A stretch of DNA of 64,000 bases, from positions 1 to 64,000 of IMG/VR virus record IMGVR_UViG_3300043418_000114. One strand, written 5' to 3'. Shown piece by piece: positions 11,781 through 59,365 of this stretch (positions are counted from its first letter, which is position 1; each line of letters starts with the position of its first letter). The position numbers were made by a program, and so were the translations under genes. The notes under the pieces were generated by a model. That model was given only the letters and a program-made list of their open reading frames with translations. It ran no database searches and was not told the DNA's origin.

Positions 11781-12313
11781 CACGTGATGAAATTATTCAT
11801 GCCCCTCAATCAACTGGTCCAGTGAGAGTATTAGGTCCGGTTAATCTTCCAGAATTGAGTAATTCATTAACACCTTTTGTTATTAAGGCTCTCAATGGAA
11901 CAACACAACAAGGGTTAAGATGGGCAGGTGACTTTGAAGGAGTCAGTGATCTAAGATACAGTGAAGCTAATCCTCGCAAAATTGGAGAAGAAGATTTCAA
12001 AGACTGGATTCCTGGCACAGAGACATTGCAGGAAGTAGCTAAAACATACGGCATACGTGATGTTGGTAGAGTTCGAATGCTCACCATGAAGCCTAAGTCA
12101 ACATACTCTCTACATCATGACCCTGATTTATGGAGAGTACACATTCCATTAATCACGAATTCAGATTCATTCATGTTCGTTGATGGCAAGATGTGGCATC
12201 TGCCCGTTGGGTTTGCATACTTGGTTCAGGTAGAGTATCATCATTTAGCAGTGAATGCAGGTGATGAAAATCGCATTCATGTTGTATTTGATTGGTGTGA
12301 CAATTTAGCATGA
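11777..12313 (+). CDS. Asp/Asn beta-hydroxylase-like 2OG-Fe(II) oxygenase
   Basis: RVRMLTM..LHHD..RVHIPL..HLAVNAGDENRIHVV double-stranded beta-helix pattern. Confidence 0.75.
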   Translation: MTRDEIIHAPQSTGPVRVLGPVNLPELSNSLTPFVIKALNGTTQQGLRWAGDFEGVSDLRYSEANPRKIGEEDFKDWIPGTETLQEVAKTYGIRDVGRVRMLTMKPKSTYSLHHDPDLWRVHIPLITNSDSFMFVDGKMWHLPVGFAYLVQVEYHHLAVNAGDENRIHVVFDWCDNLA

Positions 12314-12546
12314 AAGAGATTACCGTACATACAATTTACATGAGTGATGTAGAAGATCCTGATCTGATGGTTGCTCAACCTATATGGGAGTGGCAACAAA
12401 CAGAGAAGGGCAAATGGGTTATGGAAAATACAGTTGACCCTAGCTGGCATCGTGTAATGAATGTGTATACGTTCGGGTACGATTATCATATACGAGCCAA
12501 ATTCACACCAGAACAAATAACATTTTATAGATTGAAGTTTCAATGA
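12310..12546 (+). CDS. small protein, dispersed LRW-family-like
   Basis: W-rich; ends KFTPEQITFYRLKFQ. Confidence 0.65.
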   Translation: MKEITVHTIYMSDVEDPDLMVAQPIWEWQQTEKGKWVMENTVDPSWHRVMNVYTFGYDYHIRAKFTPEQITFYRLKFQ

Positions 12547-13514
12547 ACATTTTAGTTACCGGTGGCCTCGGTTTAATTGGGCACAACGTAGTTAAACGAC
12601 TGCAAGATTTAGGTCACATTGTATCCATCATGGATATTCAAACAAACTATGGCATCATTCCACAAGATGAAATTGATTACTTGATGGACGAACGTTTGAA
12701 GAAGATTCAAGATGTTGGTGGCATGTACAATTACGATATTTGTGATGCAAAACGCATGAGTACGGTATTCAACATCGAACAGCCAGAGATTGTAATTCAT
12801 ATGGCTAGTTTCCCAAGACAAAAAGTAGTTAACGCAAATCCCGCATGGGGAAGTCGCGTTATGAGTGAAGGGTTGCTCAACTTGTTGGAAGCTAGTAAGA
12901 ATTTCGAGGTACGAAAGTTCGTGTATATTAGTTCAAGTATGGTCTATGGAGACTTTAAGGATGATGTTACAGAAGATGCCATCTGTAAACCTCAAGGACA
13001 ATATGGTATTTTAAAATTAGCTGGAGAAGACCTTGTTAAAGACTATACTCGCCGTGACAACATTAGTCACACTATTATTCGCCCCTCTGCTGTTTATGGT
13101 CCACTTGACGTGGAAGACAGAGTTATTGCAAAGTTCATGCTCACAGCGTTGCGAGGTGGTACCCTTAATGTCAACGGCGCAAATGAAACTCTCGACTTCA
13201 CCTATGTTGAAGACGCCGCAGATGGAATCGTCGGTGCCGCACTAAGCGACAACACAGACAACAAGACCTACAATATCACCAAGAGTCACAGCCGTACATT
13301 ACTTGATGCCGCCAATCTCGCAGTGAAGATTGCAGGTAAAGGCACAATCAATGTGCGAGACAAAGATGCTGACTTCCCTAGTCGTGGTGCCCTAAACATT
13401 GATGCCGCACGTAGAGACTTTGGCTACGATCCTAAAGTCGATGTTGAAGAAGGCTTTCAGAAGTACTATGATTGGTTAAGCACCTCAGAGTACTGGACAA
13501 AGAAGAATGTTTGA
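12543..13514 (+). CDS. NAD-dependent nucleotide-sugar epimerase/dehydratase
   Basis: ILVTGGLGLIG, YISSSMVYG, YGILK (YxxxK), IRPSAVYGP, DFTYVED. Confidence 0.92.
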   Translation: MNILVTGGLGLIGHNVVKRLQDLGHIVSIMDIQTNYGIIPQDEIDYLMDERLKKIQDVGGMYNYDICDAKRMSTVFNIEQPEIVIHMASFPRQKVVNANPAWGSRVMSEGLLNLLEASKNFEVRKFVYISSSMVYGDFKDDVTEDAICKPQGQYGILKLAGEDLVKDYTRRDNISHTIIRPSAVYGPLDVEDRVIAKFMLTALRGGTLNVNGANETLDFTYVEDAADGIVGAALSDNTDNKTYNITKSHSRTLLDAANLAVKIAGKGTINVRDKDADFPSRGALNIDAARRDFGYDPKVDVEEGFQKYYDWLSTSEYWTKKNV

Positions 13515-13854
13515 CAAACTTTCAATACCAATTCTTCGGAAGTTACTGCCAGCTACTATTGCAAAAGATATAGTTGGCGTACAGCCGATGACACAGACTA
13601 ATCCTATCTTTCAAATGAAGGATGGCAAAGTTGCATTCAAAAACTTTGTGCTAGCGTCAAAGCAAGATGAATGTAACAATTACTCTGGTACCCATTATGC
13701 GGTGGACGTTCGCACTTTTGTCGCAGAATGGATAGAGACACAGCCAATTCATATGTGGAAGCCTGCTGATGACACAGAAGGATGCCAGGTTGTTTGTTCT
13801 CGATATATCATATGTGAAGAACTATTAACTTGGATGACACTCAAATGGGGATGA
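13507..13854 (+). CDS. small protein with capsid-like N-terminal motif and LRW-like tail
   Basis: IPILRKLLPATIAKDIVGVQPMT; ends LTWMTLKWG. Confidence 0.65.
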   Translation: MFDKLSIPILRKLLPATIAKDIVGVQPMTQTNPIFQMKDGKVAFKNFVLASKQDECNNYSGTHYAVDVRTFVAEWIETQPIHMWKPADDTEGCQVVCSRYIICEELLTWMTLKWG

Positions 13855-35226: not shown

Positions 35227-35493
35227 ATGTCTAAATCTCGCACATACTACACAGTGGAAACTCTTTCATTGCGAAAGTTCTCTTACTCCGATGATCATTG
35301 GATAATGAGTGGTGTAGGTCCTGGTGGCAAGACTATTGAGGAAGCACGTGACCGTGTCAAGAAAGACATGGAAAGAATTGGCATGAACCGACTGCATGAT
35401 GTGAAATTCAGAATCACAAAAACAGTTGAGATTGAGGAAACTGCCGAAGAAATTCTGGGTAACGAAGCCTCATTTTTCATGTTAAAGGCTTGA
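35227..35493 (+). CDS. hypothetical protein
   Basis: AAGGA RBS; 88 aa. Confidence 0.7.
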   Translation: MSKSRTYYTVETLSLRKFSYSDDHWIMSGVGPGGKTIEEARDRVKKDMERIGMNRLHDVKFRITKTVEIEETAEEILGNEASFFMLKA

Positions 35494-44307: not shown

Positions 44308-44547
44308 ATGAACGAACGAATTAAACAACTTGCGATACAAGCTGACAACTATGCTTACAAGATGAATCCTGAAGAAGATTCGTATGGTCGTCCTGCAAAT
44401 CCTCGCAAGTTTCAACAAGACCGTGATACAAAGTTCGCCGAGTTGCTTGTTAAAGAATGTGCCATAATTGCTAATCGTGCTGAGAATACTGAAACTGAGA
44501 TACGGTGTATGTATGATGTGATTACTGAACATTTCGGAGTTGAATGA
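44308..44547 (+). CDS. small early protein, MNERIKQL family copy 1
   Basis: MNERIKQL...KFAELLVKECA...EHFGVE. Confidence 0.75.
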   Translation: MNERIKQLAIQADNYAYKMNPEEDSYGRPANPRKFQQDRDTKFAELLVKECAIIANRAENTETEIRCMYDVITEHFGVE

Positions 44548-44756
44548 TGAACGAACGAATTAAACAACTTGGCAGTCAGGCTCGTGAATACGCCCACGAG
44601 CAAGCGGCTATGATGGACAATACTTATCTACGAGCATTCGAAGATAAGTTTGCCGAATTGATTGTCCGGGAATGTGCCGAGTTTGTTGAAAATGAAATAG
44701 AAGTAGCTGGTTATAAGGTAAAGCGAATCTTAAAACATTTCGGAGTTGAAGAATGA
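44544..44756 (+). CDS. small early protein, MNERIKQL family copy 2
   Basis: MNERIKQL...KFAELIVRECA...KHFGVEE. Confidence 0.75.
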   Translation: MMNERIKQLGSQAREYAHEQAAMMDNTYLRAFEDKFAELIVRECAEFVENEIEVAGYKVKRILKHFGVEE

Positions 44757-48186: not shown

Positions 48187-48489
48187 ATGGCAAAGAAAAA
48201 AGTAATGTCTGATATCTTTGAATTCGACGATGCCGATGAATATGAAACAGAATGGCGCGGCATGCCAGGGTTCAATCAACCAGATAATGGTGCATTCAGA
48301 CAGATTATCATTTCATTCGATGATCAAGCTGGCGTAGATGCGTTTGCTAGAGCAATCGGACAGACACTGACACCGAAAACAAAATCAGTTTGGTACCCAC
48401 CACGTCCAACTAATAAAGTGTTTGACTTGTTCTACTTTGACGAAAACACAGCACCACAAGAAGGCAAGGAAGAAGATGGCACAGCCTAA
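48187..48489 (+). CDS. small protein coupled to glycosyltransferase
   Basis: AGGAG RBS; EWRGMPGFNQ...KSVWYP. Confidence 0.75.
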   Translation: MAKKKVMSDIFEFDDADEYETEWRGMPGFNQPDNGAFRQIIISFDDQAGVDAFARAIGQTLTPKTKSVWYPPRPTNKVFDLFYFDENTAPQEGKEEDGTA

Positions 48490-49423
48490 GTATCCTCTGT
48501 ACATTCCAACAAAGGGTCGTGCTGATAGTCGATTGACAAGTAAAGCACTTGAGTTTATGAAAGTGCCACATTATCTTGTCGTAGAGCCACAAGAGTGTGA
48601 CATGTACCGAGAACATATTGCATTGTGGGAAAAAGAAACAGGTCTAACATCATGTGCTACCGTACTTGAGATGGATCTAAACTACAAACTCACGTATGAA
48701 CTACTTGACGATCTAGGACAAACTCGATCAACAGGTCCTGGCCCTGCACGTAATTTTGCATGGGATCATTCCATCAAAAATGGTCATGAGTGGCATTGGG
48801 TGATGGATGATAATATTAGAAACTTCCTGCGATTGCACAACAACCTAAAAATCAAAGTAGGTGATGGCACTTGTTTCCGTGTCATGGAAGATTTCTGTGA
48901 TCGTTATGAAAACGTCATGATGGCAGGGCCCAACTATCGTTCGTTTGCCTCACAGAATGCTAGCATGCCTCCGTTTGTTAAGAACACTCGTATCTACTCA
49001 TGTAACTTGATTCGCAATGATAGTAAGTGGGTCACTGGTGATCGTGCAGGTCAACCATTCCGCTGGCGTGGTCGCTATAACGAAGATACGATTATCTCGT
49101 TAGATATGTTGACTCAAGGATTCTGCACAGTGCAGTTTAATGCATTCTTGCAAGATAAACTCCGTACTCAAGTTCTTGGTGGTGGCAACACAGCAGAATT
49201 CTATGCTAAAGAAGGCACTGCACCAAAGAGTCGTATGCTCCAAGAAGCATATCCTGAATACACAGAACTTGTCTGGAAGTTCCAACGTGAGCATCATCAC
49301 GTGAACTATTTGCCATTCAAAGACATGAAGCTAAAGCGTAAGCCAGGTGTAAATCCAACTGGCGTCAATGACTATGGCATGAAAGTATACAGACTGCCAG
49401 ATGACTTCCCAGGCAGAGTTTAA
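48476..49423 (+). CDS. GREB1/TAGT-like GT-A glycosyltransferase
   Basis: YPLYIPTKGR, HWVMDDNI, YSCNLI, RGRYNEDT, TQVLGGGNT. Confidence 0.7.
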   Translation: MAQPKYPLYIPTKGRADSRLTSKALEFMKVPHYLVVEPQECDMYREHIALWEKETGLTSCATVLEMDLNYKLTYELLDDLGQTRSTGPGPARNFAWDHSIKNGHEWHWVMDDNIRNFLRLHNNLKIKVGDGTCFRVMEDFCDRYENVMMAGPNYRSFASQNASMPPFVKNTRIYSCNLIRNDSKWVTGDRAGQPFRWRGRYNEDTIISLDMLTQGFCTVQFNAFLQDKLRTQVLGGGNTAEFYAKEGTAPKSRMLQEAYPEYTELVWKFQREHHHVNYLPFKDMKLKRKPGVNPTGVNDYGMKVYRLPDDFPGRV

Positions 49424-50535: not shown

Positions 50536-51217
50536 CAAGCCATTGAAATATGGATGTGAATTCTGTAAGCGTGAATTTGTAAAAGAAACAACGATGCTCA
50601 ATCACATCTGTGAATACAAACACAGATGGTTAGAAAAAGACAAACACAGCAACCGTGTTGGCTTTCAGGCATGGCTACAGTTCTATCAAAAGAACACAGC
50701 AAGCAAGAAAACCAAGACGTATGAAGAATTCATTAAATCAGCGTATTACACCGCGTTCATTAAGTTCGGTGCGTATTGCGTCGGAGTCAATGCTATCAAT
50801 ATCAGTCGATTTGTTGATTGGCTACTCAAGAATCAAATCAAGATTGACAACTGGTGTACTGATACTACATACAACAAGTATCTTGTTGAATACTTACGCA
50901 GTGAAGATCCATTTGATGCTATTCACCGTAGCATAGAAACAACAATCGAATGGGCAGAGAAAGATAATATTCAGCCGCGTGATTATCTACGCTATGGCAA
51001 CGCCAACCGTATCTGTCAGTTGATTAGCAACGGCAAGATATCTCCATGGTTGTTGTTTCAGAGCAACAGTGGTGTTAACTTTTTAGACACATTGACTCAG
51101 GATCATGTTAAACTGATATTTGATTATATTAACCCCGAACAATGGGCATTGAAATTTCACAGAGATCCAGAAAATGTCAGAGCAATCAAAGAAATCCTCA
51201 CTGCTGGGGGGTATTGA
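50513..51217 (+). CDS. hypothetical protein with N-terminal zinc finger
   Basis: CEFC...HIC. Confidence 0.7.
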   Translation: MRKTSVIDKPLKYGCEFCKREFVKETTMLNHICEYKHRWLEKDKHSNRVGFQAWLQFYQKNTASKKTKTYEEFIKSAYYTAFIKFGAYCVGVNAINISRFVDWLLKNQIKIDNWCTDTTYNKYLVEYLRSEDPFDAIHRSIETTIEWAEKDNIQPRDYLRYGNANRICQLISNGKISPWLLFQSNSGVNFLDTLTQDHVKLIFDYINPEQWALKFHRDPENVRAIKEILTAGGY

Positions 51218-51419
51218 CGTTGACCACGATTTTCGTGTAAAGATACCCTTTAACAATGTCTATGGGATGGTAAGTGACTGGCACGAACATTGTGCTACAG
51301 CAATTGAAATGTTTGGATTGCCCGGTGACAAGTTCACGTGTAGAATTACACATTCAGACATGGAGTTTTGGTTTCGTGATGAAAAAGATGCTATAATGTT
51401 TGAACTATGTTGCGGTTAA
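51174..51419 (+). CDS. LRW-array protein
   Basis: ends FWFRDEKDAIMFELCCG. Confidence 0.7.
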   Translation: MSEQSKKSSLLGGIDVDHDFRVKIPFNNVYGMVSDWHEHCATAIEMFGLPGDKFTCRITHSDMEFWFRDEKDAIMFELCCG

Positions 51420-51823
51420 AAGCAAGAATTCGCAAATGGAAAGCCGAGCGTAAACTCAAAAAGAGTGGATACGAGTCTTGGTCACAGTATAAACGCAATC
51501 GTGATGATGCAGTTAATGCGTATGCAAATGATGTTGACGAGTTCTACACTGGTTATCCATATGTGTATGCTTGTCTAGACTATAATCATTATGCATATAG
51601 CACACTATGGGACTATGGACCAGGTGGTCGCAGGCATGGCTGGCATGACATGATAGACTGGTGCGAAGAAAAGATAAGATGGAACTATCGATGTGATGTT
51701 CATTGTGTCTGGAAGAATGTTTGGGGCAAAATGGAGTTGAATGATATCGGAGGTCATGATATAATCTATTTCGCGTTCAAGCATGAACGAGATTATGTAC
51801 TGTTTATGTTGAGGTGGTCATGA
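51407..51823 (+). CDS. LRW-array protein (long)
   Basis: ends FAFKHERDYVLFMLRWS. Confidence 0.75.
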   Translation: MLRLKARIRKWKAERKLKKSGYESWSQYKRNRDDAVNAYANDVDEFYTGYPYVYACLDYNHYAYSTLWDYGPGGRRHGWHDMIDWCEEKIRWNYRCDVHCVWKNVWGKMELNDIGGHDIIYFAFKHERDYVLFMLRWS

Positions 51824-52038
51824 AATACTACAAGGCAAAGTTGCCAGAAGCCTATGCACGAGTAAAGTGGTGCAAAGAGGTGTTCGGCCGACCGTTTCAA
51901 GACGTACCTCAAGGCCAACGTAAGTGGCAAGACATGCGATGGTATAGAAATAAGGGCTATCTCTATTTCAAGGATGAAAAAGATTACATGTGGTATCAAT
52001 TAGTTTGGAGTGAACACCATGAGCAAAATAACACATAA
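51820..52038 (+). CDS. LRW-array protein
   Basis: LYFKDEKDYMWYQLVWS. Confidence 0.75.
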   Translation: MKYYKAKLPEAYARVKWCKEVFGRPFQDVPQGQRKWQDMRWYRNKGYLYFKDEKDYMWYQLVWSEHHEQNNT

Positions 52039-52261
52039 CACAGCGCACTATCATGGTAGCCAAAAAAACATCCATGAAGTAAAATGGGACCCAAGTGAAA
52101 TTGATGGTCGTGAAATCAAACGCTGGTGCATTCAGAACTTTGGCAAGTCTGGATATCAAGATGAAATCGAATGTGCTAGGTGGCTAGAAGAATTCGACAA
52201 GCATTCAATTACACTACTAAAGGATGAAGACTTAACTCTTTTCTTGTTGAGGTGGGAATGA
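52019..52261 (+). CDS. LRW-array protein
   Basis: ends KDEDLTLFLLRWE. Confidence 0.75.
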   Translation: MSKITHNTAHYHGSQKNIHEVKWDPSEIDGREIKRWCIQNFGKSGYQDEIECARWLEEFDKHSITLLKDEDLTLFLLRWE

Positions 52262-52494
52262 AAGTTGAAATTAAGTTTGTTCCAGAGAAACGACCCTATC
52301 ATGTTGATGTTAGGTGGAAGTCTAGAAATGATTGGAATGCATTAGAAGCATACTCATGGTGCGAGAAAAACTTTGGTCACAGAAATGACAAGTATGACAA
52401 CCCTCGCTGGTATGCTAACCCACGATACTTCACTGGAGACTTTAAGTTTCGTGACAAAAAAGATGCTGAATGGTTCTTGTTGAGGTGGGCATGA
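52258..52494 (+). CDS. LRW-array protein
   Basis: ends FKFRDKKDAEWFLLRWA. Confidence 0.8.
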   Translation: MKVEIKFVPEKRPYHVDVRWKSRNDWNALEAYSWCEKNFGHRNDKYDNPRWYANPRYFTGDFKFRDKKDAEWFLLRWA

Positions 52495-52706
52495 AATTAT
52501 ACATTAATAAACACTCAGATGATGTGGGTGAGCGTCGATTGCCACAATGGTGGTCTAACTTTGTAGAGTCAGTTGGACTAACCAAATGGCCAGATGAAGT
52601 ATTACCTAACTACAATGCATCGTTTGGAATTGATGACAATGAAGATATGTATTTACTATTCAATCACGACAGCGATGCCACCTATTTCTTGTTATTATGG
52701 TCATGA
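52491..52706 (+). CDS. LRW-array protein
   Basis: ends LFNHDSDATYFLLLWS. Confidence 0.75.
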   Translation: MKLYINKHSDDVGERRLPQWWSNFVESVGLTKWPDEVLPNYNASFGIDDNEDMYLLFNHDSDATYFLLLWS

Positions 52707-52915
52707 AGTATTACGCACCAATCAGTCCATCTCACAAAAATCTATCAGAAGAATGGAATCGATTTAGTTATTTCAAGCGATTGGAATACGATGACAACTT
52801 TTGGGACTGGGTGAAAAGAGAGCAGAAAGCAACTATGGATATTCATAGTCGTCCAGAAAGATGGATTTTTAATAAGCACGAAGATTGTATGGTGTTTATA
52901 TTGAGGTGGGCATGA
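52703..52915 (+). CDS. LRW-array protein
   Basis: ends IFNKHEDCMVFILRWA. Confidence 0.75.
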   Translation: MKYYAPISPSHKNLSEEWNRFSYFKRLEYDDNFWDWVKREQKATMDIHSRPERWIFNKHEDCMVFILRWA

Positions 52916-53202
52916 CATATAGACCAGATACTAATTCACCAGATTGGGTACGCAGTAAACTACCACCTGAGCGTGACAAGCTCTATGGAGATAGACTGTA
53001 TTATGTTGAGCCTGGTTGTGAATATGGCTTCCGAGAAGATGATGGCTATGTTTGGAATCGAATAAGCTGTAGCTATTGGTTTGGTGACTGGATCGAAGCG
53101 AACGGTAGAGCAGATCAATGGCGTATCTATGGTGGTCGTCACCGTGCTATCTATATTGTACGTGAAGACTTGATGGTGTTTATACGATTGAAATTTCTTT
53201 GA
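52912..53202 (+). CDS. LRW-array protein (divergent)
   Basis: ends VREDLMVFIRLKFL. Confidence 0.7.
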   Translation: MTYRPDTNSPDWVRSKLPPERDKLYGDRLYYVEPGCEYGFREDDGYVWNRISCSYWFGDWIEANGRADQWRIYGGRHRAIYIVREDLMVFIRLKFL

Positions 53203-53203
53203 T

Positions 53204-53464
53204 ATGACAGGATTCAAAAGCAAAAAAGCCATGAGTGCAAGATTCACTTTGGTAACAGATTCAAAGTACAAATTCAGTCGCAATTGGTACAGTGCATCAT
53301 TCAATCTTAAAGATTATGATGCAGTTGATGAATGGTGTGAACAACAGTTTGGCCCTCAAGATAGGCGACCAGACTCTTGGTCACGTTGGTGGCATAAGTT
53401 TGAGACTAGTATTCTTTTTCGTGATGAAAAAGATTATATGTTATTTGTGTTAAGATGGTCGTAA
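53204..53464 (+). CDS. LRW-array protein
   Basis: ends LFRDEKDYMLFVLRWS. Confidence 0.8.
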   Translation: MTGFKSKKAMSARFTLVTDSKYKFSRNWYSASFNLKDYDAVDEWCEQQFGPQDRRPDSWSRWWHKFETSILFRDEKDYMLFVLRWS

Positions 53465-53465
53465 T

Positions 53466-53720
53466 ATGAAACCTCGCATAGAACCAGAAACAGTATCTGC
53501 TATTTACAAATCATGGCTACGAGCGTGTGGCCTTGATGGCGAGTCGCTGAGTTATTGGAGCAATGACATTCATCGAGTTAATCTAAGTTTTGGAAATCCT
53601 AAACACTTTGACGAATATGTTTGGGGTTGCGGTGGTAGAATCTACCAAGAAAATGGCAAGCGATACATTGAATTCTTTGAAGATTCGAACTTGACTATGT
53701 TTTTATTGAAGTGGCTATAA
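53466..53720 (+). CDS. LRW-array protein
   Basis: ends EFFEDSNLTMFLLKWL. Confidence 0.75.
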   Translation: MKPRIEPETVSAIYKSWLRACGLDGESLSYWSNDIHRVNLSFGNPKHFDEYVWGCGGRIYQENGKRYIEFFEDSNLTMFLLKWL

Positions 53721-53923
53721 TGGAGTATCAACGTTATCCTCAATATACTAGCAATTACACGAATGTAATTGTGAGTCAGGACTGGCGGAGCGCGATGAAA
53801 GCAGATCAAGTTGCTTGGTTGAAGAATCATCAAGGTGGAATGTATCATATTCATCGTAGTGGCACTGCTATCAAGTTTGAGCGCAAAGAAGATGCTGAAT
53901 GGTTTATCTTGAGGTTTCTATGA
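53720..53923 (+). CDS. LRW-array protein
   Basis: ends KFERKEDAEWFILRFL. Confidence 0.75.
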   Translation: MEYQRYPQYTSNYTNVIVSQDWRSAMKADQVAWLKNHQGGMYHIHRSGTAIKFERKEDAEWFILRFL

Positions 53924-54177
53924 AAGTATTGAGATACAACGCGAAATATGACAAGTCTAATGAGTCTTTTGAGACCTGGAAAAAAGTCAATAATGTCATT
54001 CAACAAAACATGACTCCTGAAATCAAAAAGCGATGGCTTATAGATGGTTATATAGGACTCAATGAATGTGCATTAGATTACTTTGGAATCAATCGTATCT
54101 ATCGTGACAACAACCAATCTACTGTATTCGAATTCACTGAGCACCAGTGGACTATGTTTGTGTTGAGGTGGCTATGA
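53920..54177 (+). CDS. LRW-array protein
   Basis: ends EFTEHQWTMFVLRWL. Confidence 0.75.
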   Translation: MKVLRYNAKYDKSNESFETWKKVNNVIQQNMTPEIKKRWLIDGYIGLNECALDYFGINRIYRDNNQSTVFEFTEHQWTMFVLRWL

Positions 54178-54446
54178 TTAGAGTAATGATATCCGACCAT
54201 GGCAATGAATCACCATACATGTGGTGGTACAAGTTTCTCGGCAGTGTTAAGCCATCCAAGTATGGCATGACGGTTGAAGCCCGTATAGATGTTATCAACA
54301 CTGAATTAATGAATTGGTCCGCACAATTATGGCAAAATGAACCAATCCCGCATGAACTGGGTACTACTGTTTCCAAATATCGTAACGTTTATCTTGACTT
54401 TTATGACGAGCAGGCGCATACTTGGTTTGTGTTGAGGTGGGCATGA
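54174..54446 (+). CDS. LRW-array protein
   Basis: ends DFYDEQAHTWFVLRWA. Confidence 0.75.
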   Translation: MIRVMISDHGNESPYMWWYKFLGSVKPSKYGMTVEARIDVINTELMNWSAQLWQNEPIPHELGTTVSKYRNVYLDFYDEQAHTWFVLRWA

Positions 54447-54652
54447 ACATAGAATTCAAATACAATCCATTTAAACAATACCCATGGAGATGGTACTATA
54501 GTCCACAGGGTGAAGAATTTGCCGAAGTTATGCTATGGTTGTATGACACATATGGTTCACCGATTCGCAATAGTAGATGGGACATCAATCGTGGCTGGAT
54601 TAGTTTTGCAGACAAAAAAGATGCTGAATGGTTTAAATTAAGATGGAGCTAG
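54443..54652 (+). CDS. LRW-array protein
   Basis: ends SFADKKDAEWFKLRWS. Confidence 0.8.
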   Translation: MNIEFKYNPFKQYPWRWYYSPQGEEFAEVMLWLYDTYGSPIRNSRWDINRGWISFADKKDAEWFKLRWS

Positions 54653-54897
54653 AACTATCTGAAGGTCGTGTAGCAGGAGCACGATATCACACAGCAAAGC
54701 CAATATTTAATATGGATGCTTTGTATGGGTTCGATGACACCACATGGAGATCAATGATTGAATGGTGCGTCAATACATATGGTTCTACTCCGTCTGACGG
54801 AGTGTGGACTCCTGGCTCACGATGGTATAGTAACAATGCTAAGTTCTGGTTCAGAGAGCGAAAAGACTTAGAGTGGTTTATCATTAGATGGCAATAA
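54643..54897 (+). CDS. LRW-array protein
   Basis: ends FWFRERKDLEWFIIRWQ. Confidence 0.8.
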   Translation: MELELSEGRVAGARYHTAKPIFNMDALYGFDDTTWRSMIEWCVNTYGSTPSDGVWTPGSRWYSNNAKFWFRERKDLEWFIIRWQ

Positions 54898-55133
54898 TAT
54901 TGCAAAATTACGATCAATCAAAAGGCTGGGAACTAACTCAGCCTGGTTGGTACGAGCATAAAATCACTATTGGTGAATCTAGTATGTCCGAAACATACGA
55001 AGAAGTATTGTATTGGTTGTATAATCGTATTGACAATTGTGAGCGCCATGCTAGATGGATAATCTCTAGGAATCTGATCAAAATCAGATTCAGGCATGAG
55101 CGTGACATAATACTATGTAGATTGAGTTTCTAA
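54888..55133 (+). CDS. LRW-array protein
   Basis: ends RFRHERDIILCRLSF. Confidence 0.7.
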   Translation: MAIILQNYDQSKGWELTQPGWYEHKITIGESSMSETYEEVLYWLYNRIDNCERHARWIISRNLIKIRFRHERDIILCRLSF

Positions 55134-55336
55134 TGACATTAGATTTGAATCCATTGCCTTATTATACAGCGATAGACATTATCAAGTGGTGCTTTGAAAA
55201 TAATGTAGACCGTGAAAAGGCAATCTTTTTGACTGAAATGATGGGCATAGTCCCTGATGATTGGCCAGCTGATTTAGAATGGACATTAGAGATTCCAGAA
55301 GCATATGCAACTTGGATAACATTGAGATTTACATGA
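55133..55336 (+). CDS. LRW-array protein (divergent)
   Basis: ends IPEAYATWITLRFT. Confidence 0.7.
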   Translation: MTLDLNPLPYYTAIDIIKWCFENNVDREKAIFLTEMMGIVPDDWPADLEWTLEIPEAYATWITLRFT

Positions 55337-55533
55337 TAAAGAGACAATATAACAGAGGACAACCTGGTTATTTTAATAACTTCATTTTATCGCATGACCC
55401 AGAAGGCACGATAGAAGAAGAATTAAAATTATACAAGGCTACTATAGCAAAAAGTAAAAACAAACATTACAGAATGAATGTAAAGTGGTATGACCACGAA
55501 CTATATGTAATTTTTGTATTGAGGTATTCATGA
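55333..55533 (+). CDS. LRW-array protein
   Basis: ends WYDHELYVIFVLRYS. Confidence 0.7.
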   Translation: MIKRQYNRGQPGYFNNFILSHDPEGTIEEELKLYKATIAKSKNKHYRMNVKWYDHELYVIFVLRYS

Positions 55534-55709
55534 CAACGATTACTATTCTTTGTCGTGTTACCTGGTGGGAACAATGTCAATGGATATATAAAAATTGCAC
55601 CGACGCTGTAGATAGAACAGACTGGGGATTGTGGCAATTAGGACAAAGTGATATTCACTTTGATTTAGATGAAAAAGACGCCGTATGGTTTAACTTAATG
55701 TGGGTATGA
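55530..55709 (+). CDS. LRW-array protein (59 aa, missed by ORF track)
   Basis: manual translation ends FDLDEKDAVWFNLMWV. Confidence 0.7.
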   Translation: MTTITILCRVTWWEQCQWIYKNCTDAVDRTDWGLWQLGQSDIHFDLDEKDAVWFNLMWV

Positions 55710-56134
55710 ATATGACTGACAATGAATTGATTGATTACACTATTAAATTTGACAACGACCCTGTTCGTGTCAGACTTGCCACGTACATGGAGCGTCATCC
55801 AGGTGCCATTCTAGATGACCTTGAACGAGCAGGCATGGACGAAACGTGGTGCACCTTTCGTAGTGTCGTAACATGCACTGAATATCTTCCCGGTCAATAC
55901 ATCAGTCACCTTGAAAATGAAATTGAGTACTTACAAGAACAACTAAAGCAAGCACATGATGAAATTGAAGAAATGAAACCAATGAAGGTCAGTGATTTGA
56001 TTTCTCAATTGCGTGAAGCAATCACTACAGAGAAACATAGCAGAGAACGAGCAGAAAACAAGCGTTGGCAAGCAGAAAAAGAGCGTGAAGATATGAAAAA
56101 CAAGCTCGACATGTGGGCGATATTGAATCGATGA
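55706..56134 (+). CDS. coiled-coil hypothetical protein interrupting the array
   Basis: no LRW tail; long helical C-terminus. Confidence 0.7.
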   Translation: MNMTDNELIDYTIKFDNDPVRVRLATYMERHPGAILDDLERAGMDETWCTFRSVVTCTEYLPGQYISHLENEIEYLQEQLKQAHDEIEEMKPMKVSDLISQLREAITTEKHSRERAENKRWQAEKEREDMKNKLDMWAILNR

Positions 56135-56355
56135 ACATCAAGGTAAAAGAGCTAATGCGTGAATGGTTCGAAGAAGAAGAACTCAATAATAAGTACTGGC
56201 CCTATCAGTATGCAGTCAAAGACTGGCAACATATCCATATGGTTGAACGATTCTGTTATGGCAATTTCAAAAGCAAGAACTGGCGCAATCGTGGCAGATA
56301 CTTTGGATTCAAACGCAAACAAGACTATGAGTGGTTCTTACTGAGATGGCTATGA
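56131..56355 (+). CDS. LRW-array protein
   Basis: ends FGFKRKQDYEWFLLRWL. Confidence 0.8.
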   Translation: MNIKVKELMREWFEEEELNNKYWPYQYAVKDWQHIHMVERFCYGNFKSKNWRNRGRYFGFKRKQDYEWFLLRWL

Positions 56356-56537
56356 AGCAGTATGGTCTTGCTATCGAACGTTGGACTTGGCAACACAAGC
56401 GCGAAGTTAAAATGTGGCTTGTTGAAAACTTTGGAGTCAATGGAGGTCGCTGGGGCGAACAGCCAGACTATGGTTTAGAAAATCTTTGGATGGACGAAGA
56501 TGTTTATATGATGTACTTACTGCGATGGCAAAGTTAA
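56352..56537 (+). CDS. LRW-array protein
   Basis: ends MDEDVYMMYLLRWQS. Confidence 0.75.
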   Translation: MKQYGLAIERWTWQHKREVKMWLVENFGVNGGRWGEQPDYGLENLWMDEDVYMMYLLRWQS

Positions 56538-56773
56538 AATCATTCAAGGGCAATCTGATGACTCACAAACATCGAGGTCATCGTTGGACTGTGAGAGTCG
56601 CTGGCAAAATCGATGATGAAGTTTTCAACTGGTTAAGTGATAACTGGGGTGAAGAAGATTTTGAAAATGGTCCCTGGGCTAAAATGTATTCAGCCTGGGA
56701 TTATCATGGTCACGCCACTTATGATGTGACTGATCCTAAGATTATTACTATGATGAAATTGAGGTTTGAATAA
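56525..56773 (+). CDS. LRW-array protein
   Basis: ends VTDPKIITMMKLRFE. Confidence 0.7.
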   Translation: MAKLKSFKGNLMTHKHRGHRWTVRVAGKIDDEVFNWLSDNWGEEDFENGPWAKMYSAWDYHGHATYDVTDPKIITMMKLRFE

Positions 56774-57057
56774 TGGAATACTTTTATGGTGGGGGCGGGA
56801 ACAATCGCCCCGTTTTTACATACAGATTCAAAGTAAAAAAGTGTACTAATGAAATGTACAAGTGGGCAGAAGCATATCCTGAGAAGGGTCCTTTCAGTCG
56901 TTGGCACGTTGAGTGGGCAGGTGCTTATAGCAAAATGGACAGTCCTAGAGAATATGATGTGGTACAGTTTGAACACAGCGAAGCCGCTAAGATATTCAGA
57001 ATCGCATTCGCAGGTGAGTATGAAGATATCACCATGAAAGAATATAAACTTGATTAG
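56773..57057 (+). CDS. LRW-array protein (divergent)
   Basis: QFEHSEAAKIFRIAF plus short extension. Confidence 0.7.
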   Translation: MEYFYGGGGNNRPVFTYRFKVKKCTNEMYKWAEAYPEKGPFSRWHVEWAGAYSKMDSPREYDVVQFEHSEAAKIFRIAFAGEYEDITMKEYKLD

Positions 57058-57268
57058 TGTTAGGATTGAGCGAGATAAACCCGACGAGATAATGGAACTC
57101 GTTAGAGACCTACGTAAGAGAGGGTACGCACAGGGAATAGACTTTGACTTTAAGTTTATACCGGCTGAGATTGACCATAAAAGCTATCAAGTTATTAACA
57201 AAAAGCATACAATGTTTATATTCTATAAAGAGGAAATTGCCACATGGTTCACGCTACTATATCAATAG
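57050..57268 (+). CDS. LRW-array protein
   Basis: TTG start; ends FYKEEIATWFTLLYQ. Confidence 0.65.
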   Translation: MISVRIERDKPDEIMELVRDLRKRGYAQGIDFDFKFIPAEIDHKSYQVINKKHTMFIFYKEEIATWFTLLYQ

Positions 57269-57528
57269 AACAAACACAACATCCAGATTTAGAAGATGAA
57301 CTGGCTAAGATTTTACAGGAAGAAATCGACTGGGAAATCTTAGCTGGTATGTTCGTAAAGATGGGTTGGATCATGATTGACTTGCCACGATTCCATGATA
57401 GATACGAAGCGGTTGATGTTGAATTGTGGATCGATGAAAATTGTAGTGGCAAACACATGAAGCGAGGCAAGACGTTTGTGTTTGAAAATAAACAAGACGC
57501 TGAATGGTTTAGTCTACGATGGCTATAA
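57244..57528 (+). CDS. LRW-array protein
   Basis: ends FENKQDAEWFSLRWL. Confidence 0.75.
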   Translation: MVHATISIEQTQHPDLEDELAKILQEEIDWEILAGMFVKMGWIMIDLPRFHDRYEAVDVELWIDENCSGKHMKRGKTFVFENKQDAEWFSLRWL

Positions 57529-57860
57529 AGATTGCGTGGGGCAGAAGCATAAACTTCAACATAGAGCTACACAAGGCACGTATGAGTTACAACGGCGCAA
57601 ACAAATTTAATCCTAGTCCAGGAAAGCAGTACATGGAATACACAATCATAACCGATGGTGCAGACTGCTACCCTTGGCACGAATACTTTGCTATCTTGCC
57701 ACGCAAGACAATTAGTGGCACTCGCATCTTCTGGGAGAAAGCATACAAGCGTAAAGTTTGGGTAGTATGGGGCACAGGCTTTCATATGGAACCAGAAACT
57801 CAATACGCAACTGCATTTGATTTATTAACACATGGCGATCAAAATACCTTTAAGACATGA
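57519..57860 (+). CDS. hypothetical protein interrupting the array
   Basis: WHEYFAILPRKTISGTRIFW; no LRW tail. Confidence 0.65.
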   Translation: MAIKIAWGRSINFNIELHKARMSYNGANKFNPSPGKQYMEYTIITDGADCYPWHEYFAILPRKTISGTRIFWEKAYKRKVWVVWGTGFHMEPETQYATAFDLLTHGDQNTFKT

Positions 57861-58056
57861 TACACTCACGGGTGAGCAACAGCAATGGCTTGCTCATAAC
57901 GTAGGACCACGTATGCACCATCTGCACAATAGCATTGGCGGTGAAGGCTGGCTAGCCAAGCAAGAGTGGGATCCAGAAATGGTGACTAGGCGATGGTATC
58001 TTACACTAGAAGACGATAAACTCGCCACATTTTTTACATTAAAGTTTTCATCATAA
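57832..58056 (+). CDS. LRW-array protein
   Basis: ends LEDDKLATFFTLKFSS. Confidence 0.7.
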   Translation: MAIKIPLRHDTLTGEQQQWLAHNVGPRMHHLHNSIGGEGWLAKQEWDPEMVTRRWYLTLEDDKLATFFTLKFSS

Positions 58057-58334
58057 TGGCTACAGTACCTCCCTTTCAAGATTATGACGATGACGATCCA
58101 GAGATAGAGTTTCGCAAGAAACGCTGGGACTACTGGTCGGCATTAAAGCTAGTTCGCAAAGAATACATAGAAACATTAGATCAACTAGCTGGTCAATTCG
58201 ATGCATATGATTTTGAAGATTACATAGAAGCAAACTACGGCATCAAGATGAACATTGTAGACGGTAACATCACTGATGGATATAAGATCATGGATGAAGC
58301 CAAGTACACGTTCTTTCTTTTAAAGTTTCAATAA
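58056..58334 (+). CDS. LRW-array protein
   Basis: ends IMDEAKYTFFLLKFQ. Confidence 0.75.
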   Translation: MATVPPFQDYDDDDPEIEFRKKRWDYWSALKLVRKEYIETLDQLAGQFDAYDFEDYIEANYGIKMNIVDGNITDGYKIMDEAKYTFFLLKFQ

Positions 58335-58591
58335 TGACATTCAGACAAATAGTTGATTATAACGATGTAGATGAACCCATCACATTTAGAAAGTTCAAGA
58401 AGACGGTGCATAACGGCACTGATTGGGAAGATATGATTTTCTATGAGATAAAAGAGAAGGTCTGGGATGCTCAGTCTTGGCTAAAAGAAAAATACGGTAA
58501 CCAAGTATACTGTAAAACTTGGTGGCAAACTCATACAAGTATTTGTATGTCCGAAAAGATTTACACACATTATGCTTTAAGTGTATTATAG
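58334..58591 (+). CDS. LRW-array protein (divergent)
   Basis: ends MSEKIYTHYALSVL. Confidence 0.65.
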   Translation: MTFRQIVDYNDVDEPITFRKFKKTVHNGTDWEDMIFYEIKEKVWDAQSWLKEKYGNQVYCKTWWQTHTSICMSEKIYTHYALSVL

Positions 58592-58607
58592 CATAAAGGA
58601 ATATATT

Positions 58608-59162
58608 ATGAGTACTCATGTAATGATAGACATTGAATCACTGCACACCTCACCAGACTGTGTGATTCTTACAATTGGTGCGGTATTGTTTGATCCATGT
58701 GGACAAGGCATGATCGACAAGATTGAAATCAGACCAACAATCGACGATCAAACAGAAGTTTATGATCGTAAAATTAATGATGACACGATTGCATGGTGGG
58801 GCAGACAGTCACCAGAAGCCATCGAGGAAGCACTAGGAGACCGAGACCGCGTTTCTTTTCCAGAAGCAATGGCGCAGTTACACAAGTTCTGCTGGAATCG
58901 TGCTAAGAGTCCCTGGAGCAACGGAGCAACATTCGACATTATCGTAATGGAGAATGCATTTCGTCAACTAGGCATGGTACCACCATGGAACTTCTGGGAT
59001 ATTCGTGACACGCGCACATTGTATGATGTTACTGGCGTTAAATTAAAAGACGGCGGACACGTTACTAGTCACAAAGCGGTAGAAGATGCAGAGCGCCAAG
59101 CAATTGTTGTACAACAAGGCTACATGAAATTAATGAAAGCAGGATTGGTCGCGCCGCGATGA
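58608..59162 (+). CDS. DEDDh 3'-5' exonuclease (DexA/Rv2179c-like)
   Basis: VMIDIESL, WSNGATFD, RDTRT, HKAVEDA. Confidence 0.88.
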   Translation: MSTHVMIDIESLHTSPDCVILTIGAVLFDPCGQGMIDKIEIRPTIDDQTEVYDRKINDDTIAWWGRQSPEAIEEALGDRDRVSFPEAMAQLHKFCWNRAKSPWSNGATFDIIVMENAFRQLGMVPPWNFWDIRDTRTLYDVTGVKLKDGGHVTSHKAVEDAERQAIVVQQGYMKLMKAGLVAPR

Positions 59163-59365
59163 TTAAAATCACAAAGCACCCACTTGAACGCAGAAGCTAT
59201 ATGCTCACTGCTGACGAAGATAAGACAACCAACCGCGAAGACTGGAAAGAACTTCAATCTTGGCTTAATGCGAACGCTAGTGGCTGGGTGCTTAACAGTG
59301 GCATACTAACTTTACCTAAAGAGTTGCCATCTATTGAAACATATTTTACACTGAGATTCGGATGA
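59159..59365 (+). CDS. LRW-array-like protein
   Basis: ends PSIETYFTLRFG. Confidence 0.65.
   Translation: MIKITKHPLERRSYMLTADEDKTTNREDWKELQSWLNANASGWVLNSGILTLPKELPSIETYFTLRFG

What the first reader, a model, noticed from the sequence alone, without database searches (positions are those of the whole stretch)
51811..57528. The conserved terminal L-R-W codons double as the translation signal for the next array gene
Seen: at eight junctions the end of one gene reads GAGGT-N4-ATGA (GAGGT at 51811, 52249, 52482, 52903, 53911, 54165, 54434, 55521). The Leu-Arg codons (TTG AGG) plus the first base of the next codon form a Shine-Dalgarno at fixed spacing from an ATGA stop/start overlap. At four other junctions the Arg codon ends in A, so that xGA-TGG itself supplies the next ATG (54643, 54888, 56525, 57519). 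Inference: each cassette carries the initiation signal of whichever gene follows it, so cassettes can be duplicated or reordered and stay translationally coupled. Part of the protein motif conservation may be an RNA-level constraint.
Basis: partly seen in the sequence, partly recalled or inferred. Interest (0 to 1): 0.7.

Follow-up and report, generated by a model that had tools for sequence, protein, structure and literature searches.

The report
Protein tail codons double as ribosome-binding site
In a giant uncultivated freshwater phage, about 30 small related genes sit head to tail, and the codons of their shared Leu-Arg-Trp ending are chosen to spell the ribosome-binding site and start/stop overlap of the next gene; this is a very clear case of a known principle, not a new mechanism.

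Summary

The window is the first 64 kb of a 364-kb phage genome. Positions 51.2-59.4 kb hold an array of about 30 paralogous small genes. Each ends ...F-x-L-R-W-x-stop.

- AGG is 4% of Arg codons genome-wide, but 16 of 25 at this Arg in this genome.
- Across 602 unique junctions from 98 phage sequences, AGG is 324 of 450. CGT and CGC almost vanish.
- AGG is 79% where a start lies 6-14 nt after the Arg codon, and 38% where none does.
- The Leu codon ends in G in 75% of cases (35% background).
- The variable last codon ends in A in 77%.
- The resulting GAGGTG is in register with the genome's other Shine-Dalgarno sites.

Related phages have reordered, gained and lost cassettes with breakpoints inside this junction.

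The principle is established: an intragenic Shine-Dalgarno site at a -4 overlap, and codon bias at gene 3' ends. This is a large, clean new instance of it. Actual translational coupling is untested. The protein motif is mainly structural (the end of the last helix), with a secondary RNA-level bias.

The parts
51174..59365 (+). Head-to-tail array of about 30 small genes (59-138 aa). Most belong to one paralogous family ending F-x-L-[RK]-[WFY]-x-stop. A few unrelated genes are interspersed (55706-56134, 57519-57860, 58608-59162).
   Evidence: ORF lists and curated starts; alignment A1; 24 members found by the profile HMM in this stretch.
51811..51823 (+). Junction TTG AGG TGG TCA TGA: GAGGTG Shine-Dalgarno, 3-nt gap, ATGA start/stop overlap. 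The next gene starts at 51820.
52249..52261 (+). Junction GAGGTGGGAATGA. The next gene starts at 52258.
   Evidence: The orthologous cassette in four phages begins and ends exactly at such junctions.
52482..52494 (+). Junction GAGGTGGGCATGA. The next gene starts at 52491.
52903..52915 (+). Junction GAGGTGGGCATGA. The next gene starts at 52912.
53911..53923 (+). Junction GAGGTTTCTATGA (L-R-F-L variant). The next gene starts at 53920.
54165..54177 (+). Junction GAGGTGGCTATGA. The next gene starts at 54174.
54434..54446 (+). Junction GAGGTGGGCATGA. The next gene starts at 54443.
55521..55533 (+). Junction GAGGTATTCATGA (L-R-Y-S variant). The next gene starts at 55530.
54638..54652 (+). Junction TTA AGA TGG AGC TAG. 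The A of AGA plus the TG of TGG gives the ATG at 54643, a 10-nt overlap. There is no SD-like word upstream.
54883..54897 (+). Junction ATT AGA TGG CAA TAA, with the start ATG at 54888.
56520..56537 (+). Junction CTG CGA TGG CAA AGT TAA, with the start ATG at 56525.
57514..57528 (+). Junction CTA CGA TGG CTA TAA, with the start ATG at 57519 for a non-family gene. The orthologue in L016 starts at an ATGA two codons later (MKIV... against MAIKIA...), so here an ATGA has become ATAA and the xGA-TGG ATG has taken over.
56761..56775 (+). Junction TTG AGG TTT GAA TAA TGG: GAGGT, 7 nt, then ATG in a TAATG (-1) overlap. This is also the right-hand end of a two-cassette indel relative to L020.
56341..56355 (+). 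Junction CTG AGA TGG CTA TGA. It carries both the xGA-TGG ATG (56346) and the ATGA ATG (56352) in one frame (M-A-M). This is the left-hand end of the two-cassette indel relative to L020.
52692..52706 (+). Junction TTA TTA TGG TCA TGA (L-L-W-S). There is no SD word, but TTATGG again gives an in-frame ATG (52697) ahead of the ATGA ATG (52703).
53706..53722 (+). Lys variant TTG AAG TGG CTA TAA TGG: a weaker SD-like GAAGTGG and a TAATG overlap. The next gene starts at 53720.
12310..12546 (+). Gene outside the array with the family's ending (R-L-K-F-Q) and an ATGA overlap onto an unrelated downstream gene. The profile HMM did not detect it as a family member.
13507..13854 (+). Gene outside the array with the family's ending (T-L-K-W-G): AAA TGG GGA TGA overlapping the start of a 357-aa gene. 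The profile HMM did not detect it as a family member.

Best explanation
The region is a promoter-poor, back-to-back array of small paralogous phage genes. Their common domain (beta-alpha-beta-beta-alpha) ends with a helix ...D-[AY]-x-[WLM]-F-x-L-R-W, followed in about 85% of members by exactly one more, variable residue and the stop. The next gene starts on top of that stop, as ATGA or TAATG/TGATG. The Leu-Arg-Trp codons therefore always lie where the next gene's Shine-Dalgarno site has to be. Synonymous choice has been fixed accordingly. TTG (or CTG) plus AGG plus T gives GAGGT(G), a 5-6 base match to the SD consensus, placed 4 nt (ATGA) or 7 nt (TAATG) before the ATG. The last sense codon is NNA, which supplies the A of the ATG. 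Where the Arg codon is AGA or CGA (or Lys AAA), its last A plus TGG makes an ATG two codons upstream in the same frame. That ATG serves as the start when the ATGA start is missing.

A ribosome finishing one cassette is thus held at, or can bind de novo to, the start of the next. Every cassette brings the start signal for whatever follows it. Related phages gain, lose and reorder cassettes with joints inside this roughly 15-25-nt junction, so new neighbours are expressed at once.

Shown here: the pattern, the codon statistics, their dependence on a nearby start, the register with other SD sites, the generality across phages, and the cassette boundaries. Inferred: that the word works as an SD, that translation is coupled, and that recombination uses the junction.
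For: Pattern:
- 8 sites found against 0.67 expected.
- 13 copies of TTGAGGTGGNNATGA in the genome, 0 for the reversed control.

Codon choice:
- Genome Arg usage is AGG 4.1%, CGT 43%, CGC 15%.
- At the motif Arg in this genome: AGG 16, AGA 7, CGA 2, CGT/CGC 0, out of 25 (binomial p = 9e-17).
- Over 602 unique junctions from 98 sequences: AGG 324, AGA 61, CGA 33, CGG 17, CGC 8, CGT 7.
- Background is AGG 6.3% in long ORFs and 8.9% elsewhere in the same family genes.
- 46 of 52 loci each have more than 50% AGG.
- AGG is 315/401 where an ATG or GTG lies 6-14 nt after the Arg codon and 9/24 where none does. CGT+CGC are 2% and 25% respectively (Fisher p = 3e-5).
- For AGG, the first downstream ATG begins at +8 in 218 cases and +11 in 73. 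With GTG starts added, 231 and 74.
- The Leu codon is G-ending in 365/488 against 35% inside the genes.

Controls and register:
- The neighbouring conserved Phe shows ordinary usage, TTT 79% against 69%. So the signal is not recent duplication or gene conversion.
- The last codon ends in A in 393/511 while its residue varies over S, L, A, Q, E, T and G.
- The genome uses SD sites. GGAG and AGGA peak at -12 to -10, and 37% of starts have a core against 4% of internal ATGs. The family GAGG at -9 or -12 is in the same register.
- The junction is the strongest SD among 178 ATGA overlaps.
- The same effect appears in unrelated genes: AGG 17% and GGA 56% in codons -5 to -2.
- It also appears in a second family...EHFGVE(E)-stop, where Gly is GGA in 14/14 and gives GGAG-N7-ATG.

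Cassettes:
- Order is scrambled and flanks are syntenic.
- Homology blocks end at the stop.
- A 418-nt two-cassette indel has its crossover inside the junction.

Start-site switch.

Expression and structure:
- RNA-library contigs identical to the window span 4-5 junctions each.
- Start regions are slightly less folded than gene interiors, -8.3 against -9.6 kcal/mol.

Known mechanism: PMC6728339, PMC12548453, PMC8410138.
Against: - There is no direct evidence of translation, of SD use, or of dependence on the upstream ORF.
- The host is unknown, so its anti-SD is assumed to be canonical.
- 9 of 24 junctions without a suitably placed start still carry AGG. Several of these have a start at +14 to +17 or a short ORF.
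- About a fifth of coupled junctions manage without AGG (AGA, Lys, Met variants), so the SD is not obligatory.
- Junctions from related phages are not phylogenetically independent, so the p-values overstate the evidence.
- The RNA-library contigs could be DNA carry-over.
Confidence: 0.8

Rival explanations
1. The GAGGT word is a real ribosome-binding site, but each gene is initiated independently by free ribosomes. The ATGA overlap only reflects genome compaction, and there is no translational coupling.
For: The SD is strong (6 nt) and the start regions are slightly less structured than gene interiors, so de novo binding is plausible. In E. coli, some overlapping pairs initiate largely de novo (PMC6728339).
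Against: Junctions with no SD word at all still have to be expressed, which points to reinitiation. Examples are TTA AGA TGG at 54643 and 54888, CGA TGG at 56525 and 57519, and TTA TTA TGG at 52697. The -4 and -1 overlaps are the spacings for which coupling is documented.
Confidence: 0.3
2. The nucleotide conservation at the junction is maintained by recombination: the junction is the crossover site, or it is homogenised by gene conversion. It is not maintained by selection for translation, and the SD resemblance is incidental.
For: Homology blocks between phages end at the junction. An indel crossover lies within it. The longest exact words shared by paralogous cassettes (12-24 nt) lie in the last 35 nt or so. 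Junction words from the second array cross-match in read mapping.
Against: Conversion would also fix the neighbouring Phe codon, which shows background usage. AGG frequency depends on a start at SD distance. The word is in register with unrelated SD sites. A different family reaches an SD with different codons (GGA-G), and unrelated genes show the same terminal bias. The two explanations are compatible: recombination may well use the junction in addition.
Confidence: 0.12
3. Only the protein matters. L-R-W is conserved for folding or function, and the AGG codon is inherited by descent from a founder cassette.
For: L-R-W ends a confidently modelled helix (pLDDT about 90). W and L are nearly invariant in 92 diverse members. 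The motif persists in 1,766 clusters at 50% identity.
Against: Paralogues are 15-40% identical, so synonymous sites are saturated. Yet AGG is 72% against 6-9% background, CGT/CGC are nearly absent, the Leu third base is biased to G and the last codon's third base to A. The Phe control is at background.
Confidence: 0.03
4. The SD-like word just before a stop is a programmed pause or frameshift signal, as in prfB or dnaX, that fuses consecutive cassettes into polyproteins.
For: An SD 1-3 nt from the P-site codon next to a UGA resembles the prfB arrangement. The downstream frame is -1 relative to the upstream frame.
Against: There is no slippery sequence: the codon before the stop varies freely (TCA, CTA, GCA, CAA, GGA and others). 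Almost every downstream ORF has its own ATG or GTG exactly at the overlap. TAATG, TGATG and xGA-TGG variants give the same gene starts with different geometry. A prfB-type shift is +1, which is not the frame of the next gene.
Confidence: 0.03

Closest known systems
Translational coupling at -4 (ATGA) and -1 (TAATG/TGATG) overlaps with a Shine-Dalgarno motif inside the upstream gene (termination-reinitiation; Huber et al. 2019, PMC6728339; review PMC12548453)
   Same: Co-directional genes with overlapping stop and start. [quoted passage not shown]
   Different: Here one and the same junction is repeated at dozens of consecutive genes per genome and hundreds across related phages. It is encoded by a family-defining C-terminal tripeptide. 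Coupling has not been measured.
Altered codon and stop-codon usage at gene 3' ends caused by the downstream gene's ribosome-binding site (Eyre-Walker 1996, as summarised in PMC8410138; Palleja et al. 2009, PMC2784483)
   Same: Dual use of terminal codons. Excess of SD-forming codons and of TGA stops. Seen genome-wide here as well (AGG 17% and GGA 56% in codons -5 to -2; TGA 206 of 503 stops).
   Different: The effect is usually a weak statistical trend over many unrelated genes. Here it is near-fixation (about 75%) at one homologous codon, with signs that residue choice also shifts (Arg over Lys, Trp over Phe) and that tail length is held at one residue.
PeSL cassettes (promoter-early stem-loops) that mediate modular shuffling of small ORFs in hyperplastic regions of T4-type phages (Arbiol et al. 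2010, PMC2839356; Comeau et al. 2014, PMC4122927)
   Same: A variable region of small, mostly unknown genes between conserved genes in an rIIA-encoding large myovirus-like genome. A short conserved sequence at every gene boundary. Insertions, deletions and reorderings whose ends fall in that sequence. The boundary element also carries the expression signal for the next gene.
   Different: PeSLs are intergenic transcription elements (sigma-70 promoter plus terminator hairpin). Here there is no intergenic space, the element is coding sequence, and the signal is translational. Recombination at the junction is inferred from breakpoints and has not been shown.
prfB-type SD-stimulated frameshifting at a stop codon
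   Same: An SD-like word a few nucleotides before a UGA.
   Different: There is no slippery codon, the downstream ORF has its own start codon, and the frame relation is wrong for a +1 shift.

Membership tests
Translationally coupled overlapping gene pairs with intragenic SD | Co-directional genes whose stop and start codons overlap (-4 ATGA, -1 TAATG/TGATG) or lie within a few nucleotides | tested here: met
   Of 602 unique family junctions, 337 have a TGA stop with a start at +8 (ATGA or GTGA overlap) and 115 a start at +11 (TAATG/TGATG). Window junctions are listed.
Translationally coupled overlapping gene pairs with intragenic SD | [quoted passage not shown] | tested here: met
   GAGGT(G) lies 4 or 7 nt before the ATG. 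It is in register with the genome's own SD peak.
Translationally coupled overlapping gene pairs with intragenic SD | Both genes on one mRNA | tested here: inconclusive
   Contigs from a metatranscriptome run, identical to the window, span 51781-52755 and 54820-55627, covering 4-5 junctions each. DNA carry-over is not excluded and a contig is not a single transcript. The promoter and terminator scan was not above shuffles.
Translationally coupled overlapping gene pairs with intragenic SD | Downstream translation depends on translation of the upstream ORF | not testable with these tools
   This needs a reporter with a premature stop in the upstream ORF.
PeSL-type mobile regulatory cassettes of T4-type hyperplastic regions | Intergenic sigma-70-like promoter followed by a terminator stem-loop at ORF boundaries | tested here: not met
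   Genes overlap, so there is no intergenic space. Promoter-like sites: 58 found against 44 +/- 6.7 in shuffles. Terminator-like sites: 13 found against 9.1 +/- 3.5. None is positioned at the junctions.
PeSL-type mobile regulatory cassettes of T4-type hyperplastic regions | Indels, replacements and reorderings between related phages end in the repeated boundary element | tested here: met
Programmed frameshift site (prfB/dnaX type) | Slippery codon(s) at the shift site, and a downstream frame lacking its own initiation codon | tested here: not met
   The penultimate codon is variable. An ATG or GTG sits at the overlap in nearly all junctions.
Any named protein family (Pfam, PHROGs, PDB fold) | Significant profile or fold match | tested here: not met
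   No Pfam or PHROG hit below E = 0.03. Best PDB Foldseek hit E = 0.86. Only 'uncharacterized protein, uncultured Caudovirales phage' in BFVD. Atlas neighbours are unnamed viral clusters.

The most novel reading that the evidence does not exclude
The roughly 15-25-nt junction (...TGG TTy nnn TTG AGG TGG nnA TGA) may be more than a passive overlap of signals. It may be a portable linker that works at two levels. It would be the microhomology at which cassettes are exchanged, duplicated and deleted in frame, and the translation start for whatever lands downstream. That would make it a translational, coding-sequence counterpart of PeSLs or integron attC sites. On this reading it has also shaped the protein family itself: exactly one spacer residue after Trp, Arg preferred to Lys, Trp preferred to Phe. 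That would help explain how one small-protein family expanded to dozens of copies per genome and more than 1,700 sequence clusters.
Probability: 0.25. Interest if true: 0.6.

Novelty: new member of a known kind. Interest (0 to 1): 0.4.

Why it matters
- **Dual coding.** This is one of the cleanest natural examples of dual coding at a gene end. A single homologous Arg codon is driven from about 5% to about 75% AGG by the needs of the neighbouring gene, with a built-in control: the bias drops where no start follows.
- **Annotation.** ORF callers that take the first ATG, GTG or TTG mis-start many of these genes. The true starts are the ATG of ATGA/TAATG or the xGA-TGG ATG.
- **Phage genome evolution.** It suggests how variable regions full of small orphan genes can stay expressed without a promoter or free-standing ribosome-binding site per gene, and how cassettes can be shuffled without losing expression.
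- **Operon design.** The 15-nt ending (Leu-Arg-Trp-Ser-stop overlapping Met) is a ready-made coupling linker that could be tested in synthetic operons.
- **Limit.** It does not reveal what the proteins do.

Tried and rejected
- Megablast and tblastn against 50,697 GenBank phage records found nothing for the array or a member protein.
- A scan of 185,579 bacterial and archaeal species genomes found no relative. There is therefore no host or cultured relative to lean on.
- Pfam, PHROGs, PDB fold search and the ESM Atlas gave no name for the family.
- The search for related loci with the 38-paralogue alignment failed for lack of a conserved stretch. It worked with one protein and with alignment A3.
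- The promoter and terminator scan is uninformative.
- I computed that 'exactly one residue after Trp' is commoner in coupled than in uncoupled junctions (88% against 51%). I do not use this as evidence. My definition of 'coupled' (a start 6-14 nt after the Arg codon) partly forces that result.
- A read-mapping 'joint' 52494->54425 in run X4 has only 22 letters on one side, within the repeated junction word. I treat it as a repeat artefact.
- GTG within AGG-TGG as the real start was considered and rejected. It would lie inside the SD word with nothing SD-like upstream, while the ATG six bases on has a perfect SD.
- tRNA supply was checked. The phage carries about 45 tRNAs, including Arg-UCU, Leu-CAA and Trp-CCA, but no Arg-CCU. 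This neither explains nor contradicts the AGG excess.

Full report
**What the window is.** The window is the first 64 kb of a 364,247-bp virus record with direct terminal repeats and 41% G+C. It encodes an rIIA homologue, a helicase, a TET-associated glycosyltransferase and an exoribonuclease-like protein. The genome carries about 45 tRNAs. Nothing in GenBank phages or in 185,579 species genomes resembles the array. The runs that hold it are freshwater metagenomes. It is therefore an uncultivated freshwater jumbo phage of unknown host.

**The observation.** GAGGTNNNNATGA occurs eight times in the window, at exactly the coordinates given. Shuffles give 0.67, and none of 100 reached eight. Each occurrence is the end of a small gene reading TTG AGG TGG/TTT/TAT NNA TGA, and the ATG of ATGA opens the next ORF. 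The four xGA-TGG sites (ATG at 54643, 54888, 56525, 57519) are also as described. The 15-mer TTGAGGTGGNNATGA occurs 13 times in the genome and never for the reversed control. Seven copies lie on the minus strand at 200-214 kb, six of them in a second array at 200.3-204.3 kb.

**What the genes are.** From 51.2 to 59.4 kb about 30 genes of 59-138 aa follow each other with overlaps or gaps of 0-2 nt.
- Most align as one family with 15-40% pairwise identity. Its conserved part is W..WC...FG....W......F.F(R/K)DEKD(A/Y)..F.LRW-x-stop (alignment A1).
- An AlphaFold model built on 92 sequences gives a beta-alpha-beta-beta-alpha domain with pLDDT about 90. L-R-W closes the last helix.
- There is no Pfam, PHROG, PDB or Atlas name. 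BFVD returns only uncharacterised proteins of uncultured phages.
- A profile search of 1.84 billion representatives finds 1,766 clusters with E at or below 0.001. In the best 150 the domain nearly always ends at the C-terminus with LRW plus one or two residues.
- The function of the proteins remains unknown.

**The codon test.**
- Genome-wide, Arg codons are CGT 43%, AGA 23%, CGC 15%, CGA 13%, AGG 4.1%, CGG 1.8%.
- At the motif Arg in this genome they are AGG 16, AGA 7, CGA 2 and CGT/CGC 0 out of 25 (binomial p = 9e-17).
- I fetched relatives from IMG/VR and other assemblies and detected family members with profile HMMs rather than by the motif.
- Over 602 unique junctions from 98 sequences the Arg codon is AGG 324, AGA 61, CGA 33, CGG 17, CGC 8, CGT 7.
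- AGG is 6.3% in long ORFs of the same sequences and 8.9% elsewhere in the same family genes.
- 46 of 52 loci with at least three such codons have more than half AGG.
- The preceding Leu codon ends in G (TTG or CTG) in 75% of cases, against 35% inside the genes.
- The conserved Phe three codons upstream shows ordinary usage, TTT 79% against 69%. The signal is therefore specific to the SD-forming bases and is not a trace of recent duplication or conversion.
- The single residue after Trp is variable (S, L, A, Q, E, T, G), but its codon ends in A in 393 of 511 cases.

**Dependence on a neighbouring start.**
- Where an ATG or GTG opening an ORF lies 6-14 nt after the first base of the Arg codon, AGG is 315 of 401.
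- Where there is none, and no xGA-TGG start either, AGG is 9 of 24 and CGT+CGC rise from 2% to 25% (Fisher p = 3e-5).
- For AGG, the first downstream ATG begins at +8 (ATGA) in 218 junctions and at +11 (TAATG/TGATG) in 73. With GTG starts counted these are 231 and 74.
- Several of the residual AGG cases have a start at +14 to +17 or an ATGA followed by a short ORF.
- Arg rather than another residue is found in 78% of junctions with a start at SD distance and 49% of those without. Trp rather than Phe is found in 88% and 61% respectively. This hints that residue choice is also tilted, although subfamily structure could contribute.

**Is GAGGT a plausible SD here?** Unrelated genes of this genome show a sharp excess of AAGG, AGGA and GGAG at -13 to -9. 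37% of starts have a core in -16 to -4, against 4% of internal in-frame ATGs. So the host reads SD sites. Aligned on the consensus TAAGGAGGTGATC, the usual GGAG at -11/-10 corresponds to GAGG at -10/-9. The family junction puts GAGG at -9 (ATGA) or -12 (TAATG). Among 178 ATGA overlaps in the genome, the family junctions carry the longest SD matches. Start regions fold slightly less than gene interiors.

**It is a general rule made visible.**
- In 229 non-family genes closely followed by an ATG, codons -5 to -2 have AGG 17% (3.4% in the gene body) and GGA 56% (17% in the gene body).
- A second paralogous family ends ...(E/K)HFGVE(E)-stop. Its Gly is GGA in all 14 distinct junctions with Gly, giving GGAG exactly 7 nt before the next ATG.
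- This is the effect described by Eyre-Walker (1996), as summarised in PMC8410138. It is also the intragenic SD at overlapping pairs studied by Huber et al. (PMC6728339; review PMC12548453).
- The LRW family shows it in extreme form because a conserved Arg sits at exactly the right distance from an obligatory start.

**The second junction type.**
- With AGA, CGA or Lys AAA before TGG, an ATG arises two codons ahead of, and in frame with, the ATGA position. In 48 junctions with Arg both ATGs exist (M-x-M...). In 41 only the upstream one does (25 Arg, 14 Lys, 2 other).
- At 57519 the history can be read. The orthologue in L016 is 98% identical in protein. It starts MKIVWGRS at an ATGA behind an unrelated gene. 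In the window the homologous triplet is ATA (ATGA has become ATAA), and the protein starts MAIKIAWGRS from the CGA-TGG ATG.
- These starts have no SD word upstream. If they are used, they would depend on reinitiation after termination 10 nt downstream.

**Cassettes.**
- Relatives share the flanking genes in order, but the order inside the array differs. Reliable orthologues that run 52258, 53720, 56131, 56773, 57519 in the window run 56131, 56773, 57519, 52258, 53720 in L016.
- Nucleotide homology to cassette 52258-52494 begins in the last 2-38 nt of whatever gene lies upstream. It stops at or within 6 nt of the TGA in the 14 related loci compared (not all distinct contigs), and within 1 nt in 12 of them.
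- Relative to L020, the window has 418 extra nucleotides (56356-56773, two cassettes). The crossover lies within TTGAGGTGGAGTTGATGG, so the joint is again L-R-W-S-stop overlapping a start.
- The longest exact words shared by paralogous cassettes (12-24 nt) lie in the last 35 nt. Loose ends of contigs from other lake samples begin at 51824, 52495 and 52917, directly after junctions.
- This resembles PeSL-mediated shuffling in T4-type phages (PMC2839356). Here, however, the boundary element is coding and translational, with no promoter or hairpin.

**Expression.** A freshwater metatranscriptome run holds 54% of the sampled words of the array. It yields contigs identical to the window that span 51781-52755 and 54820-55627, four to five junctions each, with uneven depth. 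This suggests multi-gene RNA, but DNA carry-over cannot be excluded.

**Verdict.**
- The terminal Leu-Arg-(Trp) codons, the one-residue tail and the stop are jointly shaped to start the next gene. Cassettes move with that signal attached.
- The protein motif is primarily a structural feature, with a secondary RNA-level tilt.
- The mechanism is a known one, so novelty is modest: a large, unusually clean new instance.
- The more novel possibility is that the junction is also the recombination substrate that drives expansion and shuffling of the family. This is consistent with the breakpoints but unproven.
- Rivals are weighed in the Rival explanations section: independent initiation without coupling, conservation by recombination alone, protein-only constraint, and frameshifting. 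Only the first remains a serious alternative for part of the claim.

Noticed in passing
window 44308-44756 (stops at 44547 and 44756); also genome 156.1-156.8 kb (+) and 206-216 kb (-): A second paralogous small-gene family ends ...(E/K)HFGVE(E)-stop. Its Gly is always GGA (14 of 14 distinct junctions with Gly; GGA is 17% genome-wide). TTC GGA GTT GAA therefore spells GGAG exactly 7 nt before the next ATG (ATGA, TAATG or TGATG). This is the same trick with different residues.
   Followed up: partly
window 51820-52038 and 52019: One array member has the motif as L-V-W-S followed by an 8-residue extension (EHHEQNNT). The next gene's ATG (52019) lies 20 nt inside it. It looks like a junction that lost its stop.
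   Followed up: no
window 56792-56811: The strongest terminator-like hairpin of the region (GGGGCGGGAACAATCGCCCC followed by a T-run) lies inside gene 56773-57057. It encodes the GGGGNNRP stretch and is conserved in L016 and L020.
   Followed up: no
genome 225.7-240.9 kb and 363408-363482 (outside the window): ARAGORN finds a cluster of about 45 tRNA genes and a tRNA with anticodon CTA (amber-reading, called 'Pyl'). TAG is the rarest stop (24 of 503 crude genes). Four array genes end in TAG (54652, 57057, 57268, 58591).
   Followed up: no
window 48476-49423: The gene just upstream of the array region matches the TET-associated glycosyltransferase family (PF20691, E = 2e-39). This hints at hypermodified phage DNA.
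   Followed up: no
window 51781-52755 and 54820-55627: Contigs from a freshwater metatranscriptome library are 100% identical to the array across several genes. Depth is uneven (0-14) compared with flat DNA depth in the source sample.
   Followed up: partly
genome 200333-204324, minus strand (locus L009): A second array of 12 members of the same family, with the same junction (six TTGAGGTGGNNATGA, plus one more at 213977), lies 150 kb away on the other strand. Junction words of the two arrays cross-match over 20 nt or more.
   Followed up: partly
window 12310-12546, 13507-13854, 35227-35493: Genes outside the arrays end in the same kind of motif (RLKFQ, TLKWG, FMLKA). The profile HMM did not detect them as family members. 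The first two use the ATGA overlap onto unrelated downstream genes.
   Followed up: partly
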